Notes: generated by a model not told the origin, from the letters alone. 64,000 nt of DNA from Paraphysomonas bandaiensis (GCA_965644295.1 CBFFRP010000032.1:59208-123207), one strand, 5' to 3'; counted from the first letter of the stretch, positions 29,901 through 64,000 are shown. Made by a program: numbers and translations.

Positions 29901-32900
29901 TCTTGATGAGGCTTCCAACTCAGTATTATCTTCTGTACTACAATCGGACAAACAGACATTCACAACAAGTCGCAAACCAGCAATATTTGCATTAAACTTG
30001 AGTAGTTTCCAAAGTCTGCTATACTCTGTAACTTCGCCACTAAGTTCTTCGTCGTCGGCATCTAGTAAAGCAACACTACGGATCAATGAACATTGAGAAA
30101 TGGAAAACATATCCGATATGCTGCTAACTAAATCATCCCAACTACCCTTCTGATTCAATGATATCACCCTCTCATCATCAGGAACATCTTTGATAAATGT
30201 AAGAATAGAAAACACATCTTCAGAACCACCTAAACCGTCTGAATCATTAGAACACAAGTTATGGGTATCGCTCTGCACTTCTACTGATATATCCTCGCTA
30301 TCAATGGACGCAGACTTAGATCTATTTTCATTAAGATACACAGCGAGGGTCAACACTTCAGAGAAATCAAATCGATCAACATATTTCCAAAATTTTGACA
30401 ACGACTTCAAAGGTGTGCTCAACGCCTCACCAGATGAGTCGACTACCACGAAGAAATTTATATTCGTCGAGACTGGCAAACCAAGCGATGTCGAAACCAA
30501 CTCCAGTATCTCCTCCCAAGTGCAATGGCGGGGCAAAAACAAGTCGAATTGTTTATCTCCATCAGGATACAAGTAAAACTTAAAATGTCTTGAGGCTTCC
30601 AACTCAGTATTATCTTCTGTACTACCATCGGACAAACAGACATTCACAACAAGTCGCAAACCAGCAATATTTGCATTAAACTTGAGTAGTTTCCAAAGTC
30701 TGCTATACTCTGTAACTTCACCACTAAGTTCTTCGTCGTCGGCATCTAGTAAAGCAACACTACGGATCAATGAACATTGAGAAATGGAAAACATATCCGA
30801 TATGCTGCTAACTAAATCATCCCAACTACCCTTCTGATTCAATGATATCACCCTCTCATCATCAGGAACATCTTTGATAAATGTAAGAATAGAAAACACA
30901 TCTTCAGAACCACCTAAACCGTCTGAATCATTAGAACACAAGTTATGGGTATCGCTCTGCACTTCTACTGATATATCCTCGCTATCAATGGACGCAGACT
31001 TAGATCTATTTTCATTAAGATACACAGCGAGGGTCAACACTTCAGAGAAATCAAATCGATCAACATATTTCCAAAATTTTGACAACGACTTCAAAGGTGT
31101 GCTCAACGCCTCACCAGATGAGTCGACTACCACGAAGAAATTTATATCCGTCGAGACTGGCAAACCAAGCGATGTCGAAACCAACTCCAGTATCTCCTCC
31201 CAAGTGCAATGGCGGGGCAAAAACAAGTCGAATTGTTTATCTCCATCAGGATACAAGTAAAACTTAAAATGTCTTGATGAGGCTTCCAACTCAGTATTAT
31301 CTTCTGTACTACAATCGGACAAACAGACATTCACAACAAGTCGCAAACCAGCAATATTTGCATTAAACTTGAGTAGTTTCCAAAGTCTGCTATACTCTGT
31401 AACTTCGCCACTAAGTTCTTCGTCGTCGGCATCTAGTAAAGCAACACTACGGATCAATGAACATTGAGAAATGGAAAACATATCCGATATGCTGCTAACT
31501 AAATCATCCCAACTACCCTTCTGATTCAATGATATCACCCTCTCATCATCAGGAACATCTTTGATAAATGTAAGAATAGAAAACACATCTTCAGAACCAC
31601 CTAAACCGTCTGAATCATTAGAACACAAGTTATGGGTATCGCTCTGCACTTCTACTGATATATCCTCGCTATCAATGGACGCAGACTTAGATCTATTTTC
31701 ATTAAGATACACAGCGAGGGTCAACACTTCAGAGAAATCAAATCGATCAACATATTTCCAAAATTTTGACAACGACTTCAAAGGTGTGCTCAACGCCTCA
31801 CCAGATGAGTCGACTACCACGAAGAAATTTATATTCGTCGAGACTGGCAAACCAAGCGATGTCGAAACCAACTCCAGTATCTCCTCCCAAGTGCAATGGC
31901 GGGGCAAAAACAAGTCGAATTGTTTATCTCCATCAGGATACAAGTAAAACTTAAAATGTCTTGAGGCTTCCAACTCAGTATTATCTTCTGTACTACCATC
32001 GGACAAACAGACATTCACAACAAGTCGCAAACCAGCAATATTTGCATTAAACTTGAGTAGTTTCCAAAGTCTGCTATACTCTGTAACTTCACCACTAAGT
32101 TCTTCGTCGTCGGCATCTAGTAAAGCAACACTACGGATCAATGAACATTGAGAAATGGAAAACATATCCGATATGCTGCTAACTAAATCATCCCAACTAC
32201 CCTTCTGATTCAATGATATCACCCTCTCATCATCAGAAACATCTTTGATAAATGTAAGAATAGAAAACACATCTTCAGAACCACGTAAACCGTCTGAATC
32301 ATAAGATATATCATTTTCCAATTGATCCGCTGTAGTCAGATTTTCGTCTTGTTTGGCTAAAGATTTCTCGTTCTCTAATTTTTCAACACAATGAACGGCA
32401 AACGTTAAAACCTCAGATGCTTCATACCGATCAACCAATTTCCAAAATTTGGACAATGTGTTCAAGGTCGCACTTAGAGATTCACCTGTGCTGAGGTCCA
32501 CATAGATAAAATGGTCAATTTCATGCGTTAATTTTACATCCAGCGACGATGAAACGACATCAACAATTTGATCCCATGTGCTGCGACGAGGTAAAAACAG
32601 GTCAATCACCTTCTCGGAATAATGAGGCAAGAAAAACTTGAAGCGCCTTGAGTCTGATGAGTTATGATATCCCGCAGATAAAATTCCTGCTTCATTTGAA
32701 TTGATATGTACTGCGAGACTGATTCCACTAGAATGTTTGTGAAACGAAAAGAACTCGAGAAGAGTTTTATACTCAGACAATTTACCACTGAGCTCATCAC
32801 CATCATCATCCATCAAAGACAGGTGTGTTATCACACAATCTGGCGACAACTCCAGCGTTTTCGCAATCAGTTTCATCAAGTCATCCCAATTTTCCGTTGC

Positions 32901-42100: not shown

Positions 42101-43242
42101 GGGCGGATGTGTCTATAAAAGACAATGAGGGGATGACCGCTTATGATTACGCTGTAAATGGTAATCATTCTTACATTGCGATGTGGTTGAAGCCATCGGA
42201 AGTTAAATCTTTGTGTAAAACGAAATCTCCGTCTATGCTTTTTTCATGTTTCACTTTATCCGATGATATTGCTGATTGTCCTCCATCGGAACCAACTTCA
42301 GATTACGAAAGCAACGCAGAATCTATTGCACCAAGTCGCTACAATGACTTTCGTGTGGCTTGCAGTGATAATGACTTAAATACAGTCAAGGCGCTTGTCA
42401 AGCAGGATAGTATGTGCGTGCGTACAACTATACAGCCAACTGGTAGAACTGGGTTGCATTATGCATGCCTTCATGGGAATTTGGGAATAGCGGAATATTT
42501 AATTGAAAATGGTTCAGATATTAATGCTGTTGATGATGAGGGTTCAACTCCGCTTCATCTTGCTTGCGAGGAAGGAAAAAACGATGTTGCGCTTGTGCTG
42601 ATTCGCAGTGGTGCTGATATGAGTATCTACGACGACTTCGGCACTACAGCACTACATAAAGTGTGCGAGCACGGTTTATTATCTCTAATGAAAAGAATAA
42701 TAGATTATTCTCAGTCAGTGCTTGATTTAGATATGACTATGAAAACAGAAGACGGCGGCTTATCAGCCATGCATATTGCAGTCGACAAGGAAAATGTAGA
42801 CATGGTGAAGTTGTTGACTTCTGTTCCAGATTTAGTGAATGCCAGGGACGAATTTCATCGAACTCCTCTTCATGTTTGTAGCATTGATGGGAATTGCACT
42901 ATTGCTGAAATTCTTCTCGATTGTGGCGCATTCATAAACGCCAGAGATGATGACAGTATGACTCCTCTGCTATATTCTTGTACAAATGGGCACTTAAAAC
43001 TAGCTAAACTCTTAGTTTCGCGAGGAGCTAACGTGTTAGCTGAGAGTGAGAAACAAGGAAATTGCTTGCACATGGCTTGCAAGCGAAATGATTTTACAAT
43101 GATTAAATGGCTTGTTGTTAAATGCGGTGTCGACCCAAATGGGGAGAGTTTTCAAGGCGTATCTCCTCTGCAGATAGCGCGTAGTTTAGAATCTACTCAG
43201 ATCGCAGATTGGTTGTTGGCGAGATGCAGTACTAGCAGTTGA
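39125..43242 (+). CDS. About 1,357-aa paralog: two PB1-like modules plus about 25-30 ankyrin repeats; 2 exons
   Basis: Phase-1 intron 39408-39451 joins ORFs 39125-39451 and 39397-43242 in frame (CGI/DTSA). The module IAIKV...VSIPAKCPWNDLV...LMLKDSDMDRMSPVIDSDSKFWKYY matches the giant gene. Many GxTPLHxA repeats. Confidence 0.88.
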
Positions 43243-43570: not shown

Positions 43571-43877
43571 TATTGAACTACAACCAACTCCTACGTGCGT
43601 ACTTGAAGTTTGGTAAAGTCAATCGCTAGTAGTTATCCTGTATTCTATGTAGCAATGAAATACAGAATATACATGACTACAGTATAGGAGTAGCTATTAC
43701 AAGTATACAAAGAAACTGAAAATATAGTAGCTGTTAAAGATATGATTTGTAGAACAGAATGTTGATGTTGGTAAATGACGTGGTTCCTAACTCACAGGGC
43801 TACAACATCATAAACTTACTATATCTCCTATAATATCAATCAGTCAATATTGCACTAACTAAAAGCGTAAATTAATA
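43571..43877 (+). repeat. 5' LTR (TATT...AATA termini)
   Basis: Base-for-base identical by eye to 48360-48666. Confidence 0.95.
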
Positions 43878-46800
43878 TGGCAGCGGATGGAAATTTCACG
43901 AATGTCGCCTCAGGCTCAAAGGTACCTCCCTTCGAGGAACTGAACTTCAAGAAATTCAAGAAGTTCTTCACCTCATTCCTCATGAGACACAATCGAGCTC
44001 ATCTTGTCCTCTCAAAGGATAAACCAAGGCACATTCATGATCTAGACTCTACAGTCCCAGCGGGAGCTCATATGACTGATGCACAGAAGAAGCGACTACG
44101 CAAAGCGAAGAAACTCTGGAACACCCGGAACGAGACCGCGTACTCCTTCCTGATGGAAGTGTGCAATGCTCACCCAAAAGCAGGCACAACAGCGGCTCTC
44201 TACGAAGGAAGTACAGCAAAAGGGTTACTACAGGCACTGGAAGAGAGATTTCTCAATGTTGAAAAGAATACAGTACAGGCAGAGGTCACAAAGTTCAATT
44301 CAATGAAGATTACCTCAAGTCAGTCAGGAGCAGAGTTCGTCGACAGCGTTGAAGCCCAGGCCAAGATTCTCGAGAATCTAGGTCGTGAAGTCACGGAAGA
44401 CGACAAGCTCACTCGACTAAAGGAAGGTCTCACAGACAAGAGATATTCCCAACTAGCACACAGCCTGTATACAGCAAACGATGTGACATACGCAAGAGCA
44501 AGCAGCCTAATCAAAGGGTATGAAAACACATCATTCGGCAAGCATGCGTTGCAAAATTCAGGGGAAGACAGTGTCAATCAAGCAGTGGATGACAGTAAAT
44601 GGAAAGAGCACAAGAGAAAGGGCAGATGCAATAAGTGCAAGAAACTTGGCCACTTTGCTAGGGAGTGCAAGACTCCAGAGCATGTCATAAAGAGGATGAA
44701 GGGGACAAGATCACAGAGAAAAGATAGAGATCACAGAAACAGGGGTGATAACAAAACAAAGCTACCTGTGTGTGAGATATGTGACATCCCAGGCCATCAG
44801 ACTAAAGACTGCTTCCACTTGAAGACTGCTAAAGCTGCAGTGGTCAGTTCTAAACGGGGGCGAGACTCTAGAAGGGAAACGGCACCCTACAAGAACAAGA
44901 AGAAACCGCGAGTGTCTGTACATGATTCAGAAGATGAAGCGGGATACGAATCGATGATATGTGTGGAAGAAGAGGTGAATCTAGCACAGAGCATGTCAGA
45001 TGTTATTTATTTAGACAGCGGGTGCAACAAGATGATCCTTACCTCCAAAAACCACATGACCAACCTTCAGCGCGCTGATAGGCAGATGTCCACAGCGAAC
45101 AAAGGTAAACTGTCAATACACAGTGTTGGCGATGTAGGAAGCTTTAAAAAGGTGTACTACGCACCTGAAGCAAGTAAGAACCTCGTAGATATGAAGAGCA
45201 TCACAGATAGGGGTTGTGTTGTGACGTTCGATAATGATGAAGTCGTCATTCGAAATAAGACTACGAACAAGACACTCATTAGACAGAGAAGTGTTAATGG
45301 ATTATATCCAGTTCGACTCGAAGACTTACTTCAGCTTGGAGAAGAATCCTCAGCAGCACTTGAGGAGCAGGGGTTTGATGACCAGCGAATTCTATGGCAC
45401 AAAAGACTTGGCCATGTCAACTATGATAAACTGACTGAGTCCGACCGCCGAGGCCTAGTTGATGGAATAAATCTGGACAAGAAATATTTCAGAAAAAAAC
45501 ACAAAAAAACGATATGCAAATGTAATACCTGCATGCGATCGAAACTCACGAGAAAGAACTTCAGGACTCCACGCCAGTTGATGAACTTAGACAACAACCC
45601 AAAGGAGAGAGGGGTGCTCAGTGCAGATACGATGGAAGTCCTAAACACGCCATCGATGGAAGGCTACAAACATGTGTTACTATTCAAGCACAGTGATGCA
45701 AAACATGTATGGGCTTATGGGTTGAAAAACAAGACTGGGAGTGAAGTGTTAAAGTGTATGAAGGACATGGTAGAGACCCAACTTGTCAAAGAAGGATTGC
45801 AACTACGACGATATCATGCAGATGGCGCAGGAGAACTAGTAGGGCAACATGTCAGGCAGTACTTACGTGAAACCACCAGCACAAGGACTGTACAGGTTAC
45901 TTGGACTCCACGTGACACACCCGAAATGAATTCGCTATCGGAACGCACTAATCGTACAGTGAAGGAGATGGCCCTTGCTATATTGCTCGATAGTGGCATG
46001 CCATCAGTATTTTGGTTCAAAGCAGTCTTGCATGCTGTATATCTGATCAACAGGTTACCTACGAAGACAACGAAAGGATACATCTCACCTTTTGAGTATA
46101 TTACTGGAACCGCACCAGATGTGAGTGACTTGAAGATCTGGGGCTGCAAGGCATGGGCTATTGTGCCGAAGGAGCAGCGCCGCAAAGAGTGGAAAGAAAA
46201 GGGAAAACCTGGATACTATATGGGACAATGTCAACAACCTGTTGGACACCAAATATATATTCCAGACCTGAATGCTATTATTGTTGCAGTCAATGCACAG
46301 TTTGATGAGTCAATTCCAGAGCGTTCACAGGAGTATTTCGACGAAATAGATAATCTACAAATCGACACCTCAGAAACAGCAGAGAGTGTAAATGACTATC
46401 AGTACCTGGTGGGCCTCAGACATCTTGATGGACACCTGTGTTATGTTACCACCAGAGTGATAGAGAGAAGAGGAGTCATTGTTGCATATAGGAGATTAGA
46501 TATGAAAGGAAATACTACCGAGGAGCAAACTCCAATTCATATCAAAGATGTAGTAAAGATGACTCACTCTACAAAGTGTCAGACCGACAAGTTTAATAGT
46601 TTGCGAAATGAGTTGGATCAGACTTGTAATGACAGTGACAATGAACAGAGGACTCCTGACCGCTCAAATCGGGGCGCATCTTCAACAGGTGGGGCAGATC
46701 GAAATCCCAGAACTGAAAAACGACCTCGAAAAAAACGGCACATTGTTAACGTTGGTGTCCTCGGCGATGTCTCATTGTTTCTTGATTCCTCCAACAGCAC

Positions 46801-48311
46801 AATTAAAGAGCCACAGACGCTGGCAGAAGCAAAGAAGACTCCACAGAGAACATACTGGATTGAAGCTACCAGGAAGGAGGTGCACAAGCTTGAACGAAGG
46901 ACATGCTGGAAGATTGTCCGAAGGCCGAAACACCGAAAAATCATAAAATCTAAATTGGTCTTTAAAGTAAAGCGCGACCATCTTGGAAAAATTAAGAAGT
47001 TCAAAGTTCGACTTGTGGCGAAAGGGTTTACTCAAGAACAAGGAGTCGACTATAATGAGACATTCTCCCCAGTAGCTAAAGGTGTATCATTTAGGCTAGC
47101 ACTAGCACTGGCTCTGCGATACAATCTGCAACTCCGTCAACTCGATGTAGAAACGGCATTTCCGTATGCAGATCTGGACGAAGACGTGTTTATGTCTCCA
47201 CCTGCAGGAATAGATATTCCACAAGGCTGTTGTTTGAAGATTCTGAAGAGTTTGTATGGCCTAAAACAAGCGCCTCGAAATTGGCATTCAATGCTGAAGG
47301 ACAGTATAAAGGCGATGGGATGATATCATTGTGCTCAGCTCTGACAGCCGTCATATTGAAGAAGTCATCAGCGCCTTTAAGACTCAATATGCCATGCAAG
47401 ATATGGGGGACCTTAAGCATTATTTAGGTCTTACCATTGAGCGTCATAATGGCCAGATTAAGTTACATCAGTCTGCATATGCTAAAGATGTTGTGGCCAG
47501 ATTCAATCACTTGTTGTCAGAAAAGAAGAGACGGTGCAAGGCAACCACACCTCTACCACCTGGCCTAAAGTTGTCCAAGGATGCAAAAGAGGAAGAAACT
47601 CGAAAACAGAGAGAATACGTTGATGCATTTCCCTATCAATCTGTTATTGGTGCCTTAATGTATTTGGCAGTGCATACTAGACCAGACATGGCATATACAG
47701 TAAATCTTCTCTCCCGGTTCACCACAAGACCCACGTACGCTGCATGTCAAGCTGCTCTGCATACTTTATTGTATTTAGAAAATACAGTTGATCAAGGTAT
47801 CATATTTCCTAATTTCACAGATGAAGACCCTCTATGTGTGTACTCTGATGCAGATTGGGCCGGAGATCTGGATACATGCAGATCCACTACAGGGTATATC
47901 GTATATCTGTGGGGTGCTCCAATTGCATGGCAGTCCAGACTGCAGCCAACAGTGGCTACGTCGACTATGGAAGCTGAATATATGGCTGCATATGCTGCAA
48001 TTCAGGAGATTGTATGGATACGAGGGGTGATGACAGAGCTCGGAATTCGTGGATTTGAGCTCAGTAAGAATGCGTCTCCAACAATCTTGAATATGGACAG
48101 CAAGAGTGCGATTGATCTAGCTCAGAACCCGGTAAATCATAAACGTTCCAAGCATATTCGGATCAAGTATCATTGGATTCGAGAGCAAGTGGGAGGCTGT
48201 ATCGTCAGGCTGAATCATGTGCCAACGGCAGAGATGACAGCAGACGTGATGACTAAAGCCTTGTCCGAGAAGCTGCACTATCAGCATGTGCACACTATGG
48301 TATCGCACTAA
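43877..48311 (+). pseudogene. Copia gag-pol polyprotein, broken by a deletion/frameshift at about 47320 within RT
   Basis: Zinc knuckles CNKCKKLGHFAREC and CEICDIPGHQTKDC. Protease YLDSGC. GAG-pre-integrase LWHKRLGH. Integrase D..D..E (PEMNSLSERTNR). RT KVRLVAKGFTQ, QLDVETAF, SLYGLKQAPR. RNase H YSDADWAG...STTGY. The stop at 47323 coincides with loss of the segment before DDII. Confidence 0.93.
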
Positions 48312-52790: not shown

Positions 52791-55700
52791 TTAAGATACG
52801 AGTTGGTGCACTGATGTAGCAAGCACTACCTGCAGAATGGGGCACTTTTCCTCCATGTGCCTACTCGAGTTACCAGCTCCACCAAGCAATTCATCGATCT
52901 GGTTCTCCACCATTTCGTCGTCTATCTCTTCCAAACTCGGCGTGTACTGGGCACTGAGCCTAGATGAATCTAAACCAAAACAAATAACAATGACACAAGT
53001 GCAAACAATATAACGAAATGTATATTACCCCTTTGCCCTGGATCCAATGATTCATTGGATTCGATATCGCCTCCACCTCTCCTTGAGGTGGATGTTTCTG
53101 AATTCTGGCAAGAACTAAGAGTTGACAGCAACACACCATCTCCTGAGGGCCTTGGTGCCACATACGCCCCAACATATCCACCGCCATCGCTTGGTCCATC
53201 TGTCGAATCCCTAAACGACTTACCTGTACGGGAGGACATATCAACGGTATTTGGATTGCGATAACGCTCAGGTTTGAGAGACTCCTCCGAGAGTGATGGT
53301 TGGCGGAACAGATTCACGTTGAAAGCATCAGCAGCCGTTTCTTGATTATACTTTTTTAGTTCAGAATTTAATTCATCTATCTCAACTGCACACTCCAGTG
53401 ACATCGCCTATATAGCAGGTAATACCAGTCAATTATACTTCCACATTTCAATTAAGTGCACAAATAACATTCAACATACAGAGCGGTACCATCAACATTG
53501 TATACATACCGCAGATGGGGTTTTGAATTTCCGATTACAGAAATCCCAAAAGTATGCCAACAGGAAAGGAAGTGGAAACATGAGATAAAACGGCCCACTG
53601 TAAAATGCCTTCTTCAAACCAAGGTATCCCAGCAAGACAAGTGAGGCACAAATAAAGATAATCATCGATCGATTGAACACTTGATACCACATGTTTCCGC
53701 CAGACTGGTACTCATTTACATACACATAAAGCAACTGATACTTGTACATGAGGTACGCAAAAGCAAAGAACAGTGCACCAAATGGAACCAGCAAAGGTGC
53801 GATGCACATATAAGTTGTCAGAATCATCAACACCATGAGCAAATTGGGATATATCCAACCGTAGCAAATCTGATAATCCTCAAAGACACCAGAGCGTAAC
53901 TCTCGTCGGGTGAACTTCTTCTTGTCGAAACAAGTTTTGACACCTATGATTGTGAGAAGCGGCCATACACGAAGCATTTCAAAGGGAACAGCAGTGAGAG
54001 TCTTTACTATGAGAAGGTTGGCAAAGTATATTGACACCTGTATAGATATTAGAAGATTGAAGCGGTTATACCACATTTACATGCGTATACAAGTACGTAC
54101 TTGAGGAAGAGATTCACCAAGAATAGTTAGTATGCTTCCAGGATTATCAAGGATATCATGAATCCCCCCAATTATGGTACCAGCCGTCACGGTGACATAT
54201 ACGTTAGCCAACTGGTAATAGAAGTAGCGCGTCATAATTAAATCCTGAATTTCACTCTCGCACTTCAGTCCTTCGTAAAATCTAGATGTGAAGTCGAATA
54301 TGAAGGGTAGAACGGCAAGCAGTATAAGCAAAACCATCACAGCTAGGTATTGATTTAAAAGTTTATAGACCAAAGAGTCTTGGTATGCCTGAAGCCAGGA
54401 GTAGTCTTCCGCCAAATTATCAAGATTAGAGTATGCGTTGATCGATGCTACTACTGCAGACCAAAATACAGCCATGATTCCAAACACCATACCGGCAATC
54501 TGATGTCTAGCAGATACTTGGGACTGAGGTGTGGACACATTTTCCCATAGGATATCTTTCGTGTTGGGTGCCGGCTTCACATTCATTTCAAAATACTCGT
54601 GAGAAAGAAGCATTTGATAAGCTACGCTCTTAGATACACGTGACTTGAATGTCACAAAGGCGGTGGATGAGGTCGAGTAGTAAGCACCTAACGTGAGAAG
54701 TTCCAATGTGCGAGTTGCCTCCAGTACGCCCCGTATCGCTCCCTTACCAGCAACTCTCGCAGTGCGCACACTCTCACTTGCAAACTCATTGAAAGAATTC
54801 CCTGCAAGAGATGCTGCATCTCCCACGATACGCTTACCCACATCTAATACCCCGTTGTCGGACTTAGTCTTTTGGGGGGTCTCTGGGTCGCGACTAGAAA
54901 ACTCACTGCTTGCACACTTTGACATCTCTGGACTTTCCTCCGGACTAGATGCAGGTGAGTGAAGAGGGGATGTCAAGTCAGATGGAAGCCACCCACTTTT
55001 GCGGCGCTTATCTGCAAAAGGAGACACGATCCGCTGGGTTAAATTCTTGCGCGCATTCACCAAACTTTCTGCAGACTTCGTTTGAATGTATTCTATCATA
55101 TTACTTACGCGACTCTCCGGGTGAAGCCGCTTTAGTTTTTCCGACTGAATAGCGTCATTCTTCCTCGTATTTCGGAGGAATTCCTGCTGCAGCTGTCTCA
55201 CAGTCTCGTTTTCTCGACTAAGAATATACGAATGGTGCTGAATGGAATCCACTTTGATATAACCGCAAACAGTTCCGTAATCTAACATCCCTTGGCTAAA
55301 AAATTGAGTAGAAATATCGCTTGGTTTCGTATCGCTATTTTCTATCATGGTGGAGTCTCGTGGGGTCTCTATTTCTTCACGTATTGCAGACAAGTGTTGC
55401 TTGGCCCTCTCACTAATATCAATGCCCCCTGGAATTCAATACCGTTAAAAGAAGACACGAAGCTATCAGGATATCATACAACGCACTCACGAATAGTTAG
55501 ATTTCTAGGATATCATAACGACTCACCTACACTGCTTCCGCGACACACATTTTCCATGTCCTCTTTGATACTAAGGTAATATGATCTGGATAAGAGTATA
55601 GTAGGACGCTTTCCCGTTGCATTCCACAAGGCAATCGCTTTCTCTAGCTGGTTTCTTATCTGCAATTGTAGTTATAAGGCGGAAATTTCCTTTCTGGTAA

Positions 55701-57372: not shown

Positions 57373-57747
57373 ATGAATATGAACAGCACTGATGTATACA
57401 ATGACGACAGTGAATCGAATATATTTGGTTCCACTAATAATGGTTACTATCTGTTTGGTGCGTTTGCTATGGTAGCGGCATATCTAACTCTGTGTTCTGA
57501 GGCCTTGAACTCCTTAGAAATTTTTACTTTGGGAACATCATACCACTTAATGTTACAACGGATGTATCGAGAAATAATGATGGTGGGTTTCGCATCATTT
57601 GTTTTCACGATACTAGATCAAACTGAAGTTAAACTGTCGACTGCGTTTTATCGAGCCTTCGGATTTGCCGACATATGTTGTTTCGTGATGGCATCATTTT
57701 TCTGTGTTCAAGGCATTTTTATTATGGTGGGATCTACTTTTTCCTAG
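57373..57747 (+). pseudogene. 5' portion of an MLO-like multi-pass membrane protein, interrupted by the downstream element
   Basis: MLQRMYREIMMVGFASFVF resembles the MLO motif KxELMxLGFISLL. It is followed by an F-x-x-A-D-I-C-C-F-V-M-A helix and then an abrupt stop and compositional shift at about 57740. Confidence 0.55.
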
Positions 57748-57858
57748 CTCTAGGAAGCTACAGGCACCATTTAAGAAAACTGCTTATTACAAGCTCTACC
57801 TCGGTCAACATGACCACATCCACCTCACGGTGACCACACTACAACTACAAATTGTCCC

Positions 57859-60800
57859 ATGCACCACAACTACCAAACACCTACAAATTCAGGTCTTTGG
57901 ATGGACGCCCAACAAACACCCAATAACAAACTACAAATAGAGCCTACACACACTCCAGTGCAGGGATGCAGCCCTGGCAGTGTTGCTCTGCCCCACAGCA
58001 TGGCCTCCCCCAGTGCCATCCTCGCAGTCTGCATATCCGACAGGGTCCCCATTCTGCGGGTTTACTCAAATGCCAATTTCGCCCCCATCAGCTCATTGCA
58101 ACAGCTGGAAACGCTGCTCCAAGCTTACTGGCCTACCCCACTTCACCCGAAACCACCCTGGAGGCACCTACTTGCACCGAACACGCCCTGTGGAATATTA
58201 AGGGTACCAGAGCTCCATCACAAACCTCGTCTACGGTGTTTTCATACTTTACACTCCTCCATCACACCCTCTCCAACATCATCACACACACCACCGATAC
58301 TCAGTCATACACACGCAACCTACACCACTGGAATACACCGTATCTTACACTGTATATTGTGCAGAGTACACACAATCCACCGCCTCCCGCCTCTACACAT
58401 GAAGAGTACTACAGCCCTTATACGCTCCTCCCTACCACTCCAGTATTCTGATGTATACGCCCTCCAGATCACACACCGACACACTCCACCCCCACTGCAT
58501 CTACTCCCTCCTACACTATGCCACTATACCTCCTTACATCACACCCCATACATTAACAACAAACACACACAACTCCTTAATATTCCTGAGCCATATCGAC
58601 CTGTCCGTGCCTTATTTTCGTCGCGATACAGTCTAGTCTACACATGGTGCCGACCGCAGAGAACCCCCGTTTCACCGTTACCTCCGCCCACTCTATTCCA
58701 CTCAACACACACACACCGTCCCATTTCGAACCCGCTGTTGTGTTCAACGCCATATGAGCCATGTAGCCATGTATACACATTGTGCTCGACGCAAAGACCA
58801 TATGAGATAATACAGCTCACGAGATGCCCAGAGCGGACTGTGGAGATGCTGTGCATGCACCTCGCGTGCCTGTTCACAGCCCATGGTACTGCTCACCTGC
58901 ATCAAAACACCCACATCCACCTCCCCTCCTGTGTCCGTGCACTAGCACAACACCACCAGCACACGCCAACTCGCGCTCTCACGCGATGCACAGAGCGGAC
59001 TGTAGAAACGCTGTGCATGTACCAGGTGTGCATGTTCACAGCCCATGGTACTGTTCACCTGCATAAAAACACCCACATCCACCTCCCCTCCCGTGCCCGT
59101 CCAACAGCACACCACCACCTACATTCTCCAACTCACGCTCTCACAGGATGCACAGAGCGGACTGTGGAAATGCTGTGCATGCACCAGGTGTGCCTGTTCA
59201 CAGCCCATGGTACTGCTCACCTGCATCAAAACACCCACATCCACCTCCCCTCCTGTGTCCGTGCACTAGCACAACACCACCAGCACACGCCAACTCGCGC
59301 TCTCACGCGATGCACAGAGCGGACTGTAGAAACGCTGTGCATGTACCAGGTGTGCATGTTCACAGCCCATGGTACTGTTCACCTGCATCAAAACACCCAC
59401 ATCCACCTCCCCTCCCGTGCCCGTCCAACAGCACACCACCACCTACATCCTCCAACTCACGCTCTCACAGGATGCACAGAGCAGACTGTGGAAATGCTGT
59501 GCATGCACCAGGTGTGCCTGTTCACAGCCCATGGTACTGCTCACCTGCATCAAAACACCCACATCCACCCCCCCTCCTGTGCCCGTCCAACAGCACACCA
59601 CCACCCACATCCTCCAACTCACGCTCTCACGCGATGCACAGAGCGGACTGTGGAAATGCTGTGCATGCACCAGGTATGCCTGTTCACAGCCCATAGTACT
59701 CACAAGCTTTCACACGACAATCCTCCGACGCAAAGAGGTGCGAAAAAACACCAACTCAGACCACGCCAGGTTGGACCTGGTTACAGCAGTGACGACAGCA
59801 GCGACGGTCCGCCCAAGCGTCGACCACGTAAACCCCCTAATAAGGTATCTCGACAGCCCACAACCCCAGGTAATACCCACCAAGCCGACGCTCCCACTCC
59901 CATGGCAGCTCCAGATAACGCGGGACAACTCCCCAGGAGACATAACCGTCCTTCCCCTATATCCCAATACATACACCCCCAGGCTACACTCCCACTCTCA
60001 TTGTTGTGTTCCCTGGGGTCCGAGCTATGTAGTCTCGCCTACACTTCGCACTCACCGCAGAGAACCTACGAAACACTATCACCTTTGTCTCCACCTCTAC
60101 ATCCAAAACACTCCCCCTGTATCACCTTGAAGCTGCTGTTGTGTTCCATGCTACATGAGCCATTTAGTCGAGACTACACATGGTGCTCGACGCACAGAAC
60201 CTACGCACAGCATTCCCGGGGTCCACATGATACAAACACACAGCGCACAGAGCACCCCTCGGCACACCAGCAGGGCCCAGGGTATACCTCTGACGATAGC
60301 GGAGATGGCCCCGCACGGAGGCCCCCCTCCCATCGACGCCGACGTGTCCATGCCTCCCACCAGACCGCACCATCCCTAACCACCCTCTTCGACTTCTTCC
60401 CCCCCATACCCACCCGTCAACAATCACACACCACCGAACAACATAATACCTGCGGTACAGACCACACTCACTCCGAAACATCGCACACTACTATAGTCGC
60501 TCCACCAGGTCACCACCCATCCACAGTCTCCCACCCACCTCTCACAGTAACAGCCCATGCACGCGACAAAACCTCCCACAAAAATCACGGCTCAGCGACT
60601 CTGTCCTCAACTCACTGTATCACTCCCACACCCCAGCTCCTGAAACCGAACAGGTCTGGCACCACAGATACCTTCACTCCTCTGTCCACCACGACTGGCC
60701 CCACTTCCCCCACGACTGCCAAAGTTAACCAGCTGGAGGCTAAGCCCCCACAACAGGACAGCACAGTCCCCTTCACCAATTTACTCACCAACACCTGGGC

Positions 60801-63800
60801 TGCCTACGACAACACCGGCCAAATAGCAGCGTCCCTGCGAGAGGATCTCCTACACCAACTCCACACCACCATCATGACCTCTCCGGACCCAACAGCCTGG
60901 CCCACACTCTTCAATACTGTCAACGACAGTTCCAACTACATACACGTCACCTCGTTCAACTGCGATACGGATTACGCCGCCACCCCCGGACGTGGCTTCT
61001 GCTCGGTGGCAGCAGCTCATCAAATTCTGAGGTCAACTGCACCAGGAAAATACAACCCTGTGCACCTTTCCAGCGAGGAGGATACCACCGCATTATTGTC
61101 ACTGGTGCAACGCTTGCTGGCCCTATGCCTCACTGCAGGCATCACTGCCACACGTATCCAAACACTGCGGCGTACACTCACCCGCATGAGGAATTCCCTC
61201 CGCTCCCCCAACTCACAGGCCAAAGCCCTCCCCGCCAAACACTACATGGACACCGAAGACTTCCTACTCATGCTTAAACTACTACGACTCCGATTCCAGT
61301 TCTGGCAGGGACACCCGCTGTACCTTCAGCGTGGCTGGGTCCTCCTCAAGACGTCGACAGGAACGACTCGACACCCCCCTACACCAGTCCACAACGTCGC
61401 GTATAGCGCATCTCACTACTTTCTCCTCAGGATTACCGATGTCGACAGTAAGTGCACCAATGCTTTTCGTGCAGCTAGACTCTCCCTGTTGCAGCTTCTT
61501 CAGTCCGCCCAAACATCATCCCACCTCTTCACTTGTCCACATCCAGTATCACACACCACGACATCATACCAACCCCACGGCACAACCACTCCCTCCCATA
61601 ACAACATGGACACTCTACACACACCAGCGTATGCAGCTGCACAGGACCACAACACCAGCTGTATCGACATATACACCTCACCACCACCCCCATGCACCAC
61701 ATCATCCCCTACCCCTCTCTATATCACCGACGGTATGGTGACCTTGAGTATCACTCCGCGTGGACTAAGGGAAATCGAAGCCCAAACTCTACATCCCGAT
61801 CAGCCTCAACCGCCCCGCACAGCAATACAGAACGCTGGCAGAATATTCAGGCTTCATGTATCCGCGCAGAACATCCACACAGCACACGATATCCCAGCCA
61901 ACGGATACTGTGCATACGGAACCCTCCATCGATTGCACATGCTCATGACCAGCAAACGACCTACAGCCACCTATTGGGAGCTCGACCTCCGGCGACCAGA
62001 GCACAGGACCTACGCAGGACAGTGGCTCAGCAACCTACTTCGAGACGTGCTCCTCCACCCTAGCTGTGACCAAACCACCATCGTCAAGCTACAACATGCT
62101 CTCACAGCCATGACCAGCAGGCATCAACACACATACACCACCCCGGACGACATTCGTCACTGGTTATCTGTCCGCGAAATGCACTGGCTCGCCACATTCT
62201 TCACCCCCACAACCACATGGGCCACTGATGGAGAATCAATCAGCATTGTTGGCATACCCAGCGACCCCCACGCGTACGGCCCTGCGTGGACGTCAGACGA
62301 ACTCCGTGAAGCCATACTTCTGAATCTCCCTCACATAGTCCTGCACAACGCACACTTCTACATCATCAACCCTGCCGGCCTCGCCATCAACCTTGACAAC
62401 GCTCTACTCAACCTTGAACCACACATTCAAGTGCGTGAACCCAGCGTTCAGCGCGACGTCCCGCCCATTAATGCACGCCCACAACATCCCACCAGCCCCG
62501 TAGCCACACCCACATGCCCTCCTGCGCCTTCAGAGACCACAGTGGCCGACACCATTCCATCATCAGACACCATAAACTCCTCCCCCCACAATTCTACATC
62601 TAGGCCACGGAAAACTCCCCGGACAAAAGGCAACCGGACCCCCACACTCCCCACCAGGACACAGCCCCCTCGTAAAGCCCGACACGCCCAGTCCTATGCA
62701 GACCTCCCTGACACAGTCCCTACACATACATTATACTGTCCACACGTGCCCTTCCGCACCTTACTCCAAGCAGCGAATCCACCCCAACCGCTCACATGGG
62801 ACCCTACACTCAAATATAAAGTCCTGATGGGCCTAGCAGACACCCTGCCCAAAGGAAATGCCTTATACGCCGGAGAGCAGATCCCGGCCCATGCCATCAT
62901 TTCCGAGTGCACTGGCCAAAGACTCTCTATCCTGGAAGCCCGGTCCACGGAGCGTTCCTCCGACTATCTCGTCCAAGACACACAAGGAACATTCGTAATA
63001 GACGCCAGGGACAGGAAAAGCAAACGCATACTTTGCGCAGCCGGATACATCAACGACCCGCTACAGGCCAATGCCGCCAACGTAGAGTTCTACACAAAAA
63101 CGGGACGGATATACATACGAGCATTACGCAAAATCAACCCCCACGAAGAACTCCTCGTCAACTACGGGTACCAGTATTGGGAAGACCAAAAGTGGTCGAC
63201 AGAGATCCTCCTCCAAGCAAGAGCGGCGTATGCCGAAGATATTGCGCTCCGAGAGCAGGAATGGCACACCTTACTCTCCCAAAAGCAGTCGCCACCACGG
63301 CAGACCCTCACCCTCCCCGAACCTTCGCGCAGTCCACTAACACACGCCACACATTTCAAATTCTCAACGTGGAACGTCAATGGCAACCCTTCCAGCAACC
63401 CCGGAAAAATAGAGGCCATACTCCACTACTTTCGCTCTCAAAGTCTAGATTGCCTTTACCTCCTCGACGTACGGCTCTCACAAAGACAAGCAGCCTACCT
63501 AGACGACTATATACAGGACCAGATCCCAGGGGTTCTCGTATGCCGCTTTCTTAACACGAAACCGAAGCTCGGACCCACTGACCCACACATGGGGGGCGCC
63601 CTCGCGGTGATAAGTGAAACATGGAAAGGGCGCATCCGATATACCAATTCTGACTGTACGGGCCTCGGCCTCATATCTCGCATCGAATTTCACACTGGCA
63701 GACCAGACATCGACGACCGACTCACCATAATAGGAGCATATCTACCCCCTAAACCTGCGACTGCTGGCCCGTGCACACTGTGGACATCACTACGAGCCTT

Positions 63801-64000
63801 TGGAAGAGCGACGCCCAAAAATGGTGCCTCACGACCGTATTCCATCCTCACGAACATCCTTACAAAATGGATTGTTAAAGCCAGGGCCAACGGCCACACA
63901 GTCCTTGTAGGCGGTGACTTCAATGCCTCTCTCGAGGGCCATGCTGGAAAGCGAGACCTACGTGGAATAGCAACATCCCTCCAACTTACAGCCCCTCTTA
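57859..64000 (+). CDS. Polyprotein of more than 2,047 aa: His/Cys-rich repeats, OTU-like protease x2, SET domain, APE (EEP) endonuclease (incomplete)
   Basis: Manual frame-1 translation has no stop from 57814 to 64000; first ATG is 57859. SET (about 62812-63183): PKGNALYAGEQIP..IISECTG, FVIDA, AAGYINDP, NVEF, IYIRALRKINPHEELLVNYGYQYW. APE (about 63352-end): FSTWNVNG, DCLYLLD, GAYLPP, VLVGGDFNA. OTU-like: TPGRGFCSVAA...SHY and IPANGYCAYG...HW...AHF. Confidence 0.85.
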   Translation, partial: MHHNYQTPTNSGLWMDAQQTPNNKLQIEPTHTPVQGCSPGSVALPHSMASPSAILAVCISDRVPILRVYSNANFAPISSLQQLETLLQAYWPTPLHPKPPWRHLLAPNTPCGILRVPELHHKPRLRCFHTLHSSITPSPTSSHTPPILSHTHATYTTGIHRILHCILCRVHTIHRLPPLHMKSTTALIRSSLPLQYSDVYALQITHRHTPPPLHLLPPTLCHYTSLHHTPYINNKHTQLLNIPEPYRPVRALFSSRYSLVYTWCRPQRTPVSPLPPPTLFHSTHTHRPISNPLLCSTPYEPCSHVYTLCSTQRPYEIIQLTRCPERTVEMLCMHLACLFTAHGTAHLHQNTHIHLPSCVRALAQHHQHTPTRALTRCTERTVETLCMYQVCMFTAHGTVHLHKNTHIHLPSRARPTAHHHLHSPTHALTGCTERTVEMLCMHQVCLFTAHGTAHLHQNTHIHLPSCVRALAQHHQHTPTRALTRCTERTVETLCMYQVCMFTAHGTVHLHQNTHIHLPSRARPTAHHHLHPPTHALTGCTEQTVEMLCMHQVCLFTAHGTAHLHQNTHIHPPSCARPTAHHHPHPPTHALTRCTERTVEMLCMHQVCLFTAHSTHKLSHDNPPTQRGAKKHQLRPRQVGPGYSSDDSSDGPPKRRPRKPPNKVSRQPTTPGNTHQADAPTPMAAPDNAGQLPRRHNRPSPISQYIHPQATLPLSLLCSLGSELCSLAYTSHSPQRTYETLSPLSPPLHPKHSPCITLKLLLCSMLHEPFSRDYTWCSTHRTYAQHSRGPHDTNTQRTEHPSAHQQGPGYTSDDSGDGPARRPPSHRRRRVHASHQTAPSLTTLFDFFPPIPTRQQSHTTEQHNTCGTDHTHSETSHTTIVAPPGHHPSTVSHPPLTVTAHARDKTSHKNHGSATLSSTHCITPTPQLLKPNRSGTTDTFTPLSTTTGPTSPTTAKVNQLEAKPPQQDSTVPFTNLLTNTWAAYDNTGQIAASLREDLLHQLHTTIMTSPDPTAWPTLFNTVNDSSNYIHVTSFNCDTDYAATPGRGFCSVAAAHQILRSTAPGKYNPVHLSSEEDTTALLSLVQRLLALCLTAGITATRIQTLRRTLTRMRNSLRSPNSQAKALPAKHYMDTEDFLLMLKLLRLRFQFWQGHPLYLQRGWVLLKTSTGTTRHPPTPVHNVAYSASHYFLLRITDVDSKCTNAFRAARLSLLQLLQSAQTSSHLFTCPHPVSHTTTSYQPHGTTTPSHNNMDTLHTPAYAAAQDHNTSCIDIYTSPPPPCTTSSPTPLYITDGMVTLSITPRGLREIEAQTLHPDQPQPPRTAIQNAGRIFRLHVSAQNIHTAHDIPANGYCAYGTLHRLHMLMTSKRPTATYWELDLRRPEHRTYAGQWLSNLLRDVLLHPSCDQTTIVKLQHALTAMTSRHQHTYTTPDDIRHWLSVREMHWLATFFTPTTTWATDGESISIVGIPSDPHAYGPAWTSDELREAILLNLPHIVLHNAHFYIINPAGLAINLDNALLNLEPHIQVREPSVQRDVPPINARPQHPTSPVATPTCPPAPSETTVADTIPSSDTINSSPHNSTSRPRKTPRTKGNRTPTLPTRTQPPRKARHAQSYADLPDTVPTHTLYCPHVPFRTLLQAANPPQPLTWDPTLKYKVLMGLADTLPKGNALYAGEQIPAHAIISECTGQRLSILEARSTERSSDYLVQDTQGTFVIDARDRKSKRILCAAGYINDPLQANAANVEFYTKTGRIYIRALRKINPHEELLVNYGYQYWEDQKWSTEILLQARAAYAEDIALREQEWHTLLSQKQSPPRQTLTLPEPSRSPLTHATHFKFSTWNVNGNPSSNPGKIEAILHYFRSQSLDCLYLLDVRLSQRQAAYLDDYIQDQIPGVLVCRFLNTKPKLGPTDPHMGGALAVISETWKGRIRYTNSDCTGLGLISRIEFHTGRPDIDDRLTIIGAYLPPKPATAGPCTLWTSLRAFGRATPKNGASRPYSILTNILTKWIVKARANGHTVLVGGDFNASLEGHAGKRDLRGIATSLQLTAPL
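58820..59700 (+). repeat. 162-bp coding tandem repeat x about 5.4 (54-aa His/Cys-rich unit)
   Basis: The GAGC(G/A)GACTGT anchor occurs at 58831, 58993, 59155, 59317, 59479 and 59641. Unit: RCTERTVEMLCMHQVCLFTAHGTAHLHQNTHIHLPS... Confidence 0.95.

What the first reader, a model, noticed from the sequence alone, without database searches (positions are those of the whole stretch)
57859..64000. Hidden >2,000-aa retroelement polyprotein fusing a SET methyltransferase and two OTU-like proteases to an APE endonuclease
Seen: + frame 1 is open for more than 6.1 kb with no introns. It is missing from the ORF track because its stop is off-window. It carries a SET domain about 55 aa upstream of an APE domain (TWNVNG...YLP...GDFNA), with two Cys...His protease-like modules further upstream. 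Established: APE followed by RT is the non-LTR retrotransposon layout. Some clades carry accessory cysteine proteases (Ulp1 in NeSL, Josephin-like in Dualen/RandI), and some dinoflagellate retroelements carry DNA methyltransferases. A SET domain is not a standard non-LTR component to my knowledge. Inference: the element may bring a lysine methyltransferase plus deubiquitinase-like enzymes to its insertion site, to write or erase chromatin marks, evade silencing or process its polyprotein. This is the best candidate for an undescribed system in the window.
Basis: partly seen in the sequence, partly recalled or inferred. Interest (0 to 1): 0.92.

Follow-up and report, generated by a model that had tools for sequence, protein, structure and literature searches.

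The report
Giant LINE retrotransposon with SET domain
The window ends in the first 6.1 kb of a roughly 10.9-kb jumping gene (a LINE-type retrotransposon) from an unidentified marine micro-eukaryote, whose single giant protein carries a histone-methyltransferase-type SET domain and two probable cysteine-protease modules next to the usual endonuclease and reverse transcriptase; I found no description of this combination.

Summary
Frame 1 of 57859-64000 has no stop in 2,047 codons, while frames 2 and 3 have 42 and 50. Pfam finds SET (aa 1666-1770) and an APE-type endonuclease (aa 1837 to the window end), both above the curated cut-offs. Five metagenomic contigs about 99 % identical to the window continue past 64000. 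They show APE and RT (RVT_1, YADD) in one frame, then an RNase H-like DEDHD block, a CCHC knuckle, a stop about 3,547 codons from the start, and a conserved 3' UTR without poly(A). Two contigs end in unrelated or sister-copy DNA at internal points, as 5'-truncated copies would. Differences among copies are mostly synonymous (50 vs 32, p = 2e-12). Unnamed metagenomic relatives at 22-46 % identity also pair SET with APE-RT; one of them has SET downstream of RT. SET is therefore a clade feature, not a one-off capture. The two Cys...His modules keep their Cys and His in a 35 %-identical family. A low-confidence AF2 model (pLDDT 54) hits mostly OTU deubiquitinases, but below significance (best E 0.055), so "OTU-like" stays tentative. 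Function, host and LINE clade are undetermined. Verdict: a new variant of a known kind.

The parts
57748..57858 (+). Probable 5' end and short 5' UTR of the element. The host-like ORF 57373-57747 stops at TAG 57745-57747, and composition changes to C-rich here. The exact boundary is not defined.
   Evidence: Sequence read. Composition. In-frame stop ending at 57813.
57859..64000 (+). First 2,047 codons of the single giant ORF. In the family the ORF is about 3,547 codons, and its stop lies about 4.5 kb beyond the window.
   Evidence: Extension by L001-L005.
57859..60900 (+). N-terminal low-complexity region rich in Pro, Thr and His (aa 1-1014), with two acidic-Ser then basic motifs (PKRRPRKPP at 59812-59838, SHRRRRVH at 60328-60351) that may be nuclear localisation signals. 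It is kept open in frame, but translation is not shown.
   Evidence: No stops in frame 1 against 15 and 26 stops in frames 2 and 3 over the first 3 kb. Composition and motifs. The 35 %-identical family P0160 has only about 82 aa upstream of module 1.
58816..59700 (+). Tandem repeat of 5.5 x 162 bp, encoding 54-aa Cys/His-rich units.
   Evidence: TRF. Units printed. Only a weak Rtr1/RPAP2 zinc-finger hint (E 0.4).
60901..61458 (+). Cys...His module 1 (aa 1015-1200). Putative catalytic Cys1048 sits in TPGRGFC and His1186 in SASHYFLL. This is a candidate papain-fold protease; the fold is not established.
   Evidence: Cys and His motifs conserved in P0160. AF2 failed (pLDDT 34). Weak similarity to module 2. 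No Pfam hit.
61834..62403 (+). Cys...His module 2 (aa 1326-1515). Cys1351 sits in IPANGYC at the N-terminus of a predicted helix, and His1499 in HNAHFYII in a predicted beta-strand. Tentatively OTU-like.
   Evidence: Relatives P0009, P0013 and P0160 keep the motifs. AF2 pLDDT 54 and pTM 0.53. About 40 of the top 50 Foldseek PDB hits are OTU DUBs, but the best is E 0.055 with TM 0.35-0.40. BFVD was not decisive.
62854..63168 (+). SET / PR-SET-like lysine methyltransferase domain (aa 1666-1770). The motif positions are the GxG region at 62851-62877, AAGYINDP at 63037-63060 and EELLVNYGYQYW at 63145-63180.
   Evidence: Pfam SET 37.4 bits and PRDM2_PR 25.9 bits. A profile of 7 family SETs hits EZH2 at 1.3e-13, then PRDM12, KMT2C, LegAS4, PRDM9, SETD7 and EHMT2. 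The invariant residues are N, Y, G, Y and W.
63367..64000 (+). APE-type (EEP) endonuclease, N-terminal two thirds, cut by the window end.
   Evidence: Pfam Exo_endo_phos. The rest of the domain, with IDHILH and DHRP, is in P0001 and L004. The catalytic D/N/D/H columns are invariant across the clade.

Best explanation
Window 57748-64000 is the 5' 6.2 kb of a young, recently mobile APE-type non-LTR (LINE) retrotransposon of at least 10.9 kb, sitting in a gene-dense, intron-poor marine micro-eukaryote.

Shown: it encodes one ORF of about 3,547 codons. The order is an N-terminal low-complexity region with Cys/His repeats, Cys...His module 1, Cys...His module 2, SET, APE, RT (YADD), an RNase H-like block (D-E-D-H-D), and a CX2CX8HX4C knuckle. 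A conserved 3' UTR of at least 168 nt without poly(A) follows. The element belongs to an isolated clade, so far seen only in unnamed metagenomic proteins, in which a SET domain is a conserved component.

Inferred mechanism: the element copies itself by target-primed reverse transcription. APE nicks the target, RT extends from the nick using the 3' UTR-bound RNA, and RNase H removes the template. The SET domain keeps the SAM-pocket and catalytic-Tyr motifs, so it probably works as a lysine methyltransferase carried in cis by the integration machinery. Its most likely substrates are nucleosomal histones at or near the new insertion; a host or element protein in the RNP is also possible. This would set the chromatin state of new copies. 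The two papain-like, possibly OTU-type, modules either cut the giant polyprotein into working parts or remove ubiquitin-like modifiers that would otherwise mark the RNP or local chromatin for restriction.
For: Architecture:
- SET and EEP pass Pfam cut-offs.
- L004:4133-8422 is one open frame containing the C-terminal half of APE plus RVT_1 at 71.5 bits.
- The RT is nearest to R2 and LINE-1 ORF2p among solved structures.
- YADD and the APE catalytic columns are invariant across the clade.
- The D, E, D, HPE and AD columns of an RNase H pattern are invariant in four families, and a faint precomputed RNase_H hit lies downstream of P0158.
- The CCHC knuckle is conserved in all four families.
- The stop codon and 3' UTR are seen in L003.

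Mobility:
- There are at least 6 independent contigs at 98.7-99.8 % identity from several marine samples, including Tara Oceans.
- L001 changes to unrelated AT-rich DNA at window-equivalent 60009, and L003 changes to the 3' end of a sister copy at 61911. Both look like 5' truncation.
- Among-copy variants are 50 synonymous against 32 non-synonymous, with 48 of 82 at third codon positions. The expected synonymous share is 24 %, giving p = 1.9e-12.

SET as a clade feature:
- P0160 is an intact 2,805-aa ORF at 35 % identity, ordered SET-APE-RT.
- P0021 (31 %) and P0025/P0158 (24 %) have the same order.
- Fragments P0162, P0007, P0010, P0018 and P0042 also carry SET next to APE.
- In L008, SET lies in an ORF downstream of APE-RT yet is 32 % identical to the window's SET, E 1e-15.
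- The SET motifs are conserved.

Modules: the Cys and His motifs are conserved at 21-27 % identity, and the Foldseek hit list is enriched in OTU proteins.
Against: - No biochemical or expression evidence was available.
- The canonical SET NH(S/C) motif reads ND here, so catalytic activity is assumed, not shown.
- The OTU assignment is below significance: no Pfam hit at E <= 10, pLDDT 34 and 54, and best Foldseek E 0.055.
- The RNase H profile finds nothing in the PDB by sequence or in Pfam.
- Every metagenomic copy has at least one private frameshift. No single copy of this family has been seen intact end to end.
- No TSD or 3' junction was seen for the window copy.
- Modules 1 and 2 are absent or undetectable in the more distant SET-LINE relatives.
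- Translation of the first roughly 1,000 codons is unproven.
Confidence: 0.75

Rival explanations
1. Same retrotransposon, but the SET domain is not a histone-mark writer. It could be a binding-only or pseudo-enzyme module that tethers the RNP to chromatin. It could also methylate a non-histone target, such as the element's own protein or a host restriction or repair factor.
For: NH to ND change in the SET NHxC motif. The PR-domain profile also matches (PRDM2_PR), and by my own recollection many PR domains are weak or inactive enzymes. The nearest solved SETs span many specificities, so no substrate can be read off.
Against: The GxG region, the Asn, and the YGxxYW block with the catalytic-type Tyr are conserved across 22-38 % identical SET domains in the family alignment. 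By my own recollection, active PRDM9 also lacks NH.
Confidence: 0.3
2. The two Cys...His modules are not OTU deubiquitinases. They could be another papain-like self-processing protease, or non-catalytic (structural or metal-binding) domains whose Cys and His conservation is incidental.
For: No Pfam or PDB sequence hit. Low-confidence models. All Foldseek matches have E > 0.01 and TM <= 0.40. No Asp two or three residues before the Cys as in DGNC-type OTUs (the motif knowledge is my own).
Against: The Cys sits at the N-terminus of a predicted helix and the His in a C-terminal beta-strand, in both modules. Both residues are kept in P0160 at 21 % identity. About 40 of the top 50 PDB fold hits are OTU proteins.
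Confidence: 0.3
3. The true ORF starts later, for example at Met764 as the gene callers chose for P0001, or at Met1006. The first 0.75-1 thousand codons would then be 5' UTR or promoter repeats that merely happen to be open.
For: Low-complexity composition and a recent DNA-level tandem repeat. No homologue of this region anywhere. The P0160 family has only about 82 aa before module 1. Codon-position bias is weaker in the first 2.9 kb.
Against: No stops in about 1,000 codons, against 15 and 26 stops in the other two frames of the same 3 kb. The repeat unit is 162 bp, or 54 codons, so the frame is preserved. In aa 615-1014, variants are 6 synonymous against 3 non-synonymous, a small sample.
Confidence: 0.35
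4. This is not a mobile element with an integral SET. It would instead be a host SET gene next to, or chimerically assembled with, a LINE insertion (a one-off capture), or a domesticated host gene family.
For: Only one junction with host DNA is visible in the window. All relatives are metagenomic contigs whose assembly could be chimeric.
Against: The same SET-APE junction occurs in at least 6 near-identical contigs and in families at 24-46 % identity. One continuous frame runs from the modules through SET into APE in the window, and through SET, APE and RT in P0160. Different contigs have different flanks and apparent 5' truncations. Copies are under purifying selection while remaining multi-copy.
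Confidence: 0.03

Closest known systems
[quoted passage not shown]
   Same: The order is APE, then RT, then an RNase H-like block, then a CCHC knuckle, in one ORF. 5'-truncated copies occur. The RT is recognisably LINE-type.
   Different: About 1,800 aa of extra N-terminal protein, including SET and two Cys...His modules. The ORF of about 3,547 codons is far longer than the 1,275-aa LINE-1 ORF2p seen. No separate ORF1 is seen. The next-nearest non-family LINE proteins match only at E about 1e-22, against E of 1e-158 to 0 within the clade. Clade placement was not testable here.
Dualen/RandI group (APE + RT + RNase H + RLE; I recall a cysteine protease from Kojima & Fujiwara 2005, not verified here)
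   Same: A very long single ORF with APE, RT and RNase H, plus, if my recollection is right, a cysteine protease accessory. A protist or algal host. No poly(A) tail.
   Different: No restriction-like endonuclease motif is recognisable after the CCHC. Here the protease-like modules are N-terminal and duplicated. I know of no report of SET in Dualen.
[quoted passage not shown]
   Same: A LINE polyprotein carrying an N-terminal cysteine protease of the ubiquitin-like-modifier-processing kind.
   Different: Those are RLE-type, target-specific elements whose protease is Ulp1-like (C48). By my recollection, C48 proteases have the His before the Cys. Here the element is APE-type with a Cys...His order.
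Retrotransposons that captured DNA cytosine methyltransferases in dinoflagellates and charophytes (PMC5890265), and the MBD-carrying Copia family of arthropods (PMC6673714)
   Same: Retroelements that have incorporated a host epigenetic writer or reader domain into their coding sequence, presumably to manipulate their own chromatin state.
   Different: The writer here is a SET lysine methyltransferase, not a DNMT or MBD. The carrier is an APE-type LINE.
SET-TE fusions counted in the 172-genome survey of chromatin domains (bioRxiv 10.1101/2021.11.30.470311), and SETMAR
   Same: SET domains co-occurring with TE-derived domains in a single gene model.
   Different: SETMAR is a host SET gene fused to a dead mariner transposase, which is a domestication. 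The survey text I read names SET only as a category and does not describe a SET-APE-RT LINE clade. Its supplementary tables were not checked.

Membership tests
APE-type non-LTR (LINE) retrotransposon | EEP/APE endonuclease N-terminal to the RT in the same ORF | tested here: met
   Exo_endo_phos at aa 1837-2027 in the window. APE C-terminal half plus RVT_1 in one 1,430-aa open frame of L004. The same order is seen in P0160, P0021 and P0158.
APE-type non-LTR (LINE) retrotransposon | LINE-type RT with an intact YxDD catalytic motif | tested here: met
   RVT_1 at 71.5-73.3 bits. PDB matches are R2 (8e-12) and LINE-1 ORF2p (4.5e-7). YADD is invariant.
APE-type non-LTR (LINE) retrotransposon | Multi-copy, with 5'-truncated copies and no LTRs | tested here: met
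   At least 6 contigs at about 99 % identity. L001 and L003 end at internal points (win-equivalent 60009 and 61911), next to unrelated DNA and a sister copy's 3' end respectively. No repeat of the element elsewhere in the window.
APE-type non-LTR (LINE) retrotransposon | Target-site duplication flanking a full insertion | not testable with these tools
   The 3' junction of the window copy lies beyond 64000. No contig spans a whole copy with both flanks.
Named LINE clade (L1, Tx1, I, Ingi, Tad1, Ambal, Proto, Dualen and others) | Position in an RT phylogeny with labelled reference elements | not testable with these tools
Only the isolation of the clade is shown.
Dualen/RandI | A second, restriction-like (PD-(D/E)xK) endonuclease after the RT and CCHC | tested here: not met
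   No Pfam or PDB hit in the 732-aa post-RT region. No PD...(D/E)xK pattern seen by eye after the knuckle. This is motif-level only, so a very divergent RLE is not excluded.
SET-domain lysine methyltransferase | SET fold recognised by profile | tested here: met
   Pfam SET 37.4 bits against a cut-off of 22.4. The family profile hits 149 distinct solved SET-containing sequences at E <= 0.1, with EZH2 best at 1.3e-13.
SET-domain lysine methyltransferase | SAM-pocket and catalytic motifs (GxG, NHxC, ELxxxY) | tested here: inconclusive
   The GxG region and EELLxxYGxxYW are conserved. The Asn is invariant, but the His is replaced (IND instead of NHS). This is compatible with PR/SET-type enzymes, but activity is not shown.
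SET-domain lysine methyltransferase | Methyltransferase activity on lysine | not testable with these tools
   Needs a biochemical assay.
OTU cysteine protease / deubiquitinase | Profile-level sequence membership (Pfam OTU) | tested here: not met
   No OTU hit for the whole ORF at E <= 1, nor for either module at E <= 10. No PDB sequence hit.
OTU cysteine protease / deubiquitinase | OTU fold with the Cys at a helix N-terminus and the His in a beta-strand | tested here: inconclusive
   The module 2 model has pLDDT 54 and pTM 0.53 with the expected Cys-helix and His-strand placement. OTU proteins dominate the top 50 PDB hits, but the best is E 0.055, prob 0.82, TM 0.35-0.40. Module 1 was not modelled usefully.
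OTU cysteine protease / deubiquitinase | Conserved catalytic Cys and His | tested here: met
   TPGxG[FY]C with HY (module 1) and IPAxGYC with HF (module 2) are kept between the window and P0160 at 21-27 % identity.
RNase H (type 1) domain of retroelements | D-E-D-H/R-D catalytic pattern in order (as defined in PMC4640811) | tested here: inconclusive
   The DGS, E, DC, HPE and AD columns are invariant in four families. However, no Pfam or PDB profile hit was found. Only a faint precomputed RNase_H hit lies next to P0158.

The most novel reading that the evidence does not exclude
A clade of LINE retrotransposons encodes its own active histone-lysine methyltransferase and ubiquitin-family protease(s), and delivers them in cis with the integration machinery. 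Each new insertion, or the element's own chromatin, would then be marked by the element rather than by the host, either to escape silencing or to self-limit. As far as I could find, this would be the first retroelement-encoded histone-mark writer, a counterpart to the DNMT-carrying retrotransposons of dinoflagellates and charophytes.
Probability: 0.3. Interest if true: 0.85.

Novelty: new variant of a known kind. Interest (0 to 1): 0.7.

Why it matters
Transposons are usually treated as targets of chromatin silencing. A few are known to carry readers (chromodomains, PHD, MBD) or DNA methyltransferases. A conserved, selected SET domain inside a LINE polyprotein would extend this to histone-mark writing and would give a concrete, testable case of an element editing its own chromatin environment.

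The element is also unusually large for a LINE: one ORF of about 3,547 codons. It adds a deep, previously unnamed branch that is visible only in marine metagenomes. One copy is already mis-filed as a bacterial MAG protein (MBQ27685.1), which shows how such elements contaminate bins.

If the Cys...His modules are deubiquitinases, the element would combine two host-manipulating enzymes otherwise typical of viruses and bacterial effectors.

Tried and rejected
- Pfam on the pre-SET 700 aa, on each module separately (E <= 10) and on the 732-aa post-RT region gave nothing useful.
- PDB sequence searches of the modules, the post-RT region, the single SET+APE sequence and the RNase H-like profile gave nothing. 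One call failed because I used the wrong frame.
- AF2 of modules 1+2 with 3 sequences gave pLDDT 34 and was unusable.
- A profile search for more module-2 relatives returned only P0009 and P0013 again. Local profile searches found the modules only in P0160.
- hhalign of module 1 against module 2 gave probability 6 %, so paralogy is not shown.
- The JGI metagenome scan first failed for lack of a conserved stretch, then returned only two weak SET loci, L006 and L007. The IMG/VR scan returned none.
- Host identification failed. There is no rRNA, tRNA or Rfam hit in the window, and an exact look-up of a host ORF was not on record.
- The 344-aa ORF upstream of P0160 in L010 is not related to the window's N-terminal region, so there is no evidence of a shared ORF1.
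- No 2A-like NPGP motif occurs in this family.
- I considered a variant genetic code because of in-frame TAA codons in two host genes. I rejected it in favour of short in-frame introns.
- Literature searches for a described SET-bearing LINE found none. The search covers open-access text only.
- For the synonymous/non-synonymous counts I used a majority-rule reference held only in memory as a frame guide. It was neither printed nor saved.
- I do not take the contig for human. It is gene-dense with multi-kilobase uninterrupted ORFs, and its only close matches are marine metagenome contigs.

Full report
**1. The observation.** Translating window 57859-64000 in frame 1 gives 2,047 codons without a stop. 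The same stretch has 42 and 50 stops in frames 2 and 3. From its base composition, the chance of 2,047 open codons is about 1.6e-28. Even the first 3 kb, which are low-complexity, have no stops in frame 1 against 15 and 26 in the other frames. The nearest in-frame stop upstream ends at 57813, and 57859 is the first ATG after it. The ORF lister omits this ORF only because it runs off the window. The stretch stands out by composition: GC 0.55 with strong C-over-G skew, against about 0.41 GC elsewhere. Pfam finds SET (aa 1666-1770, 37.4 bits, cut-off 22.4), the related PRDM2_PR profile (25.9 bits, just under its cut-off of 27), and Exo_endo_phos (aa 1837-2027, 25.0 bits, cut-off 24.5). A 162/324-bp tandem repeat at 58816-59700 encodes 5.5 Cys/His-rich units of 54 aa.

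**2. Surroundings and host.** The other 57 kb of the window hold long uninterrupted ORFs. They include ankyrin-repeat proteins of 2,976, 1,281 and 1,015 aa, an ATAD3-like AAA ATPase, a RasGEF, a PWWP/DEK_C protein, an OSCA/RSN1-like channel, and a frameshifted Ty1/Copia pol. There are no tRNA genes and no Rfam matches. Two host genes are split by a single in-frame TAA. In the channel gene, the Pfam profile runs on across the break with about 19 extra codons, which fits a short in-frame intron better than a variant genetic code. This is an intron-poor micro-eukaryote, and I do not take it for human. The host was not identified: an exact look-up of a host ORF found nothing. No other copy or fragment of the element lies in the window.

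**3. Extending the element.** A search with the SET+APE part found one 90 % cluster, P0001-P0006. It comes from ENA marine metagenomes including Tara Oceans, and includes one protein filed under a Nitrospiraceae MAG. Their contigs L001-L005 are 98.7-99.8 % identical to the window and overlap it up to base 64000. Beyond that point:
- L004:4133-8422 is one 1,430-aa open frame with the C-terminal half of APE (GDFNAS, IDHILH, DHRP) and RVT_1 at 71.5 bits.
- By sequence, the RT is nearest to R2 (8e-12) and LINE-1 ORF2p (4.5e-7) among solved structures.
- After the RT comes a block with DGS, E, DC, HPE and AD columns that are invariant in four diverged families. This is the D-E-D-H-D order defined for LINE RNase H domains in PMC4640811.
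- The RNase H assignment stays motif-level. Neither Pfam nor a PDB profile search confirms it, and only a faint precomputed RNase_H hit lies next to P0158.
- A CX2CX7-8HX4C knuckle follows and is conserved in all four families.
- The ORF ends at L003 6797-6799, and at least 168 nt of 3' UTR follow.

Using the majority frame of the six copies, the reading frame runs 2,932 codons from about window 59704 to that stop. That makes about 3,547 codons from 57859, and an element of at least 10.9 kb. Each metagenomic copy has its own one- or two-base indel(s) at different places. The family frame is therefore continuous, but no single copy of this family was seen intact end to end. The window copy is intact as far as it can be read.

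**4. Evidence that it is mobile and selected.**
- L001 switches to unrelated AT-rich DNA at window-equivalent 60009.
- L003 switches at 61911 to the last codons and 3' UTR of a 79 %-identical sister copy. This is a head-to-tail junction with no poly(A).
- Both junctions fit 5'-truncated LINE insertions, although metagenome chimeras cannot be excluded.
- Among the six copies, 82 single-base variants split into 50 synonymous and 32 non-synonymous, and 48 of them fall at third codon positions. Random change would give 24 % synonymous (binomial p = 1.9e-12).
- The copies therefore descend from lineages that were under selection for the protein.

**5. SET is a feature of the clade.** An exhaustive HMMER search of 1.84 billion representatives, followed by a profile search, found relatives at 22-46 % identity.
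- P0160 is an intact 2,805-aa ORF: 838 aa, then SET 839-940, APE 1027-1274 and RT 1710-1984.
- P0021 has SET-APE-RT and the post-RT region on L009.
- P0025/P0158 has SET 497-594, then APE and RT.
- Fragments P0162, P0007, P0010, P0018 and P0042 span SET and APE.
- In L008, the 2,371-aa APE-RT protein P0060 has no N-terminal SET. The next ORF, 7251-8630, has one (35 bits) that is 32 % identical to the window's SET (E 1e-15), and no second APE lies downstream. The same kind of SET therefore sits on the other side of the RT in that lineage.
- All these proteins are unnamed metagenome predictions. The next-best LINE proteins outside the clade score only E about 1e-22.
- In a seven-sequence alignment, the Asn, the YG and the YW of the EELLxxYGxxYW block are invariant. 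The GxG region is conserved, and the canonical NH reads ND.
- The profile matches 149 distinct solved SET-containing sequences at E <= 0.1. EZH2 is best at 1.3e-13, followed by PRDM12, KMT2C, LegAS4, PRDM9, SETD7 and EHMT2. The fold is secure, but the substrate cannot be inferred.

**6. The two Cys...His modules.** Pfam gives no OTU hit or any other hit, and PDB sequence searches give nothing. P0160:1-840 aligns collinearly with window aa 1001-1660 (E 6e-10). It keeps TPGxG[FY]C with a later HY in module 1, and IPAxGYC with a later HF in module 2. Fragments P0009 and P0013 keep the module 2 His block. AF2 on both modules failed (pLDDT 34). On module 2 alone, with four sequences, it reached pLDDT 54 and pTM 0.53. 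That model puts the Cys at the N-terminus of a helix and the His at the start of a C-terminal beta-strand. Foldseek against the PDB gave no hit at E <= 0.001, yet about 40 of the top 50 hits are OTU deubiquitinases: nairovirus vOTU, Wolbachia OTU, OTUD5, OTUD2 and otubains. The best is E 0.055, prob 0.82, TM 0.35-0.40. BFVD was mixed. Similarity between modules 1 and 2 is weak. My reading is that these are papain-like and possibly OTU-type, but unproven. They were found only in this family and its 35-54 % relatives, not in the more distant SET-LINEs.

**7. Mechanism.** Shown: the domain order, the catalytic motifs of APE and RT, multiple copies, probable truncations, and purifying selection. 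Inferred from established LINE biology: target-primed reverse transcription by APE and RT, with RNase H removing the template. The conserved 3' UTR block, which is identical over about 50 nt between sister subfamilies, is a plausible RT recognition site. Inferred with less support: SET acts as a lysine methyltransferase brought in cis to the integration site or the RNP. The Cys...His modules either cleave the 3,547-aa polyprotein or strip ubiquitin-like modifiers. Whether the first roughly 1,000 codons are translated is open. They are kept open, but they are repetitive and lack homologues.

**8. Comparison with known systems.** The backbone is an APE-type LINE with RNase H and a CCHC knuckle, as in the I group, plant L1, Proto1 and Dualen (PMC4640811). 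It is not Dualen-like in the defining respect, because no restriction-like endonuclease is recognisable. NeSL and some Utopia elements carry a Ulp1-type protease, but they are RLE elements. The closest analogies in concept are DNMT-carrying retrotransposons (PMC5890265) and the MBD-Copia family (PMC6673714). A survey of 172 genomes lists SET among the chromatin domains found fused to TE domains, but the text I read does not describe this architecture. Five literature searches found no description of a SET-bearing LINE. Assignment to a named LINE clade could not be tested, because no labelled reference RTs were available.

**9. Verdict.** This is a real element and most likely recently active. 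It is a new variant of a known kind: a LINE clade with a conserved SET domain, plus lineage-specific putative cysteine proteases. Interest is 0.7. The most novel reading still open is that it is a retroelement-encoded histone-mark writer; I give that a probability of about 0.3.

Noticed in passing
window 43877-48311 (+): A Ty1/Copia-type retroelement pol with zinc knuckle, pre-integrase, SH3-like domain and RVT_2. The RVT_2 domain is split between two ORFs by a frame change near 47323/47331, so the copy is probably degraded.
   Followed up: partly
window 20962-38459 (-) and 39397-43242 (+): Divergently oriented blocks of very long intron-free ORFs. They include ankyrin-repeat proteins of 2,976, 1,015 and 1,281 aa. 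The 2,976-aa ORF also gives many scattered weak Pfam hits in its N-terminal part (PB1, LysM and others) that look repeat-driven.
   Followed up: no
window 53492-55393 (-) and 35739-38459 (-): Two host genes are each split by one in-frame TAA (54077-54079 and 37560-37562). In the RSN1_7TM/OSCA-like gene, the Pfam profile continues across the break with about 19 extra codons. That suggests a short in-frame intron of about 57 nt rather than a reassigned stop codon.
   Followed up: partly
window 57373-57747 (+): A 124-aa ORF with a hydrophobic, membrane-protein-like sequence and no Pfam hit ends exactly where the element begins. The insertion may have truncated a host gene. The other flank is off-window.
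   Followed up: no
L003 1-203 and 6770-6967: The 3' end of a 79 %-identical sister subfamily abuts a 5'-truncated copy head-to-tail, with no poly(A). The two 3' UTRs share a block of about 50 nt containing a small hairpin (GCAC-CATG-GTGC against GCGC-CAAG-GTGC) and a terminal CTCATGTAATAATCAGA. This may mean the element inserts next to existing copies. It is a single instance.
   Followed up: partly
L005 7145-7310: Element sequence stops at L001-equivalent 7062 and unrelated AT-rich DNA follows. This is either a 3'-deleted copy or a chimeric metagenome contig, and it is not what simple TPRT predicts.
   Followed up: no
L005 (GCA_002726235.1, PBSN01000010.1); protein P0002 = MBQ27685.1: A copy of this eukaryotic retroelement is deposited as a contig of a 'Nitrospiraceae bacterium' MAG. 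This is bin contamination.
   Followed up: partly
L008 1-9000: The distant relative has the opposite strand composition on its coding strand (GC skew of about +0.26, against -0.29 to -0.38 in the window element). It also carries SET downstream of the RT, so it likely comes from a different host and has a rearranged architecture.
   Followed up: partly
window 63454-63474: In the first APE acidic motif, this clade reads L-x-D-x-R (LLDVR in the window; D and R are invariant in the clade alignments) where I would expect the Q-E-T of L1-type endonucleases. This could be a Glu-to-Asp change at a metal-binding position. The comparison is by eye only.
   Followed up: no
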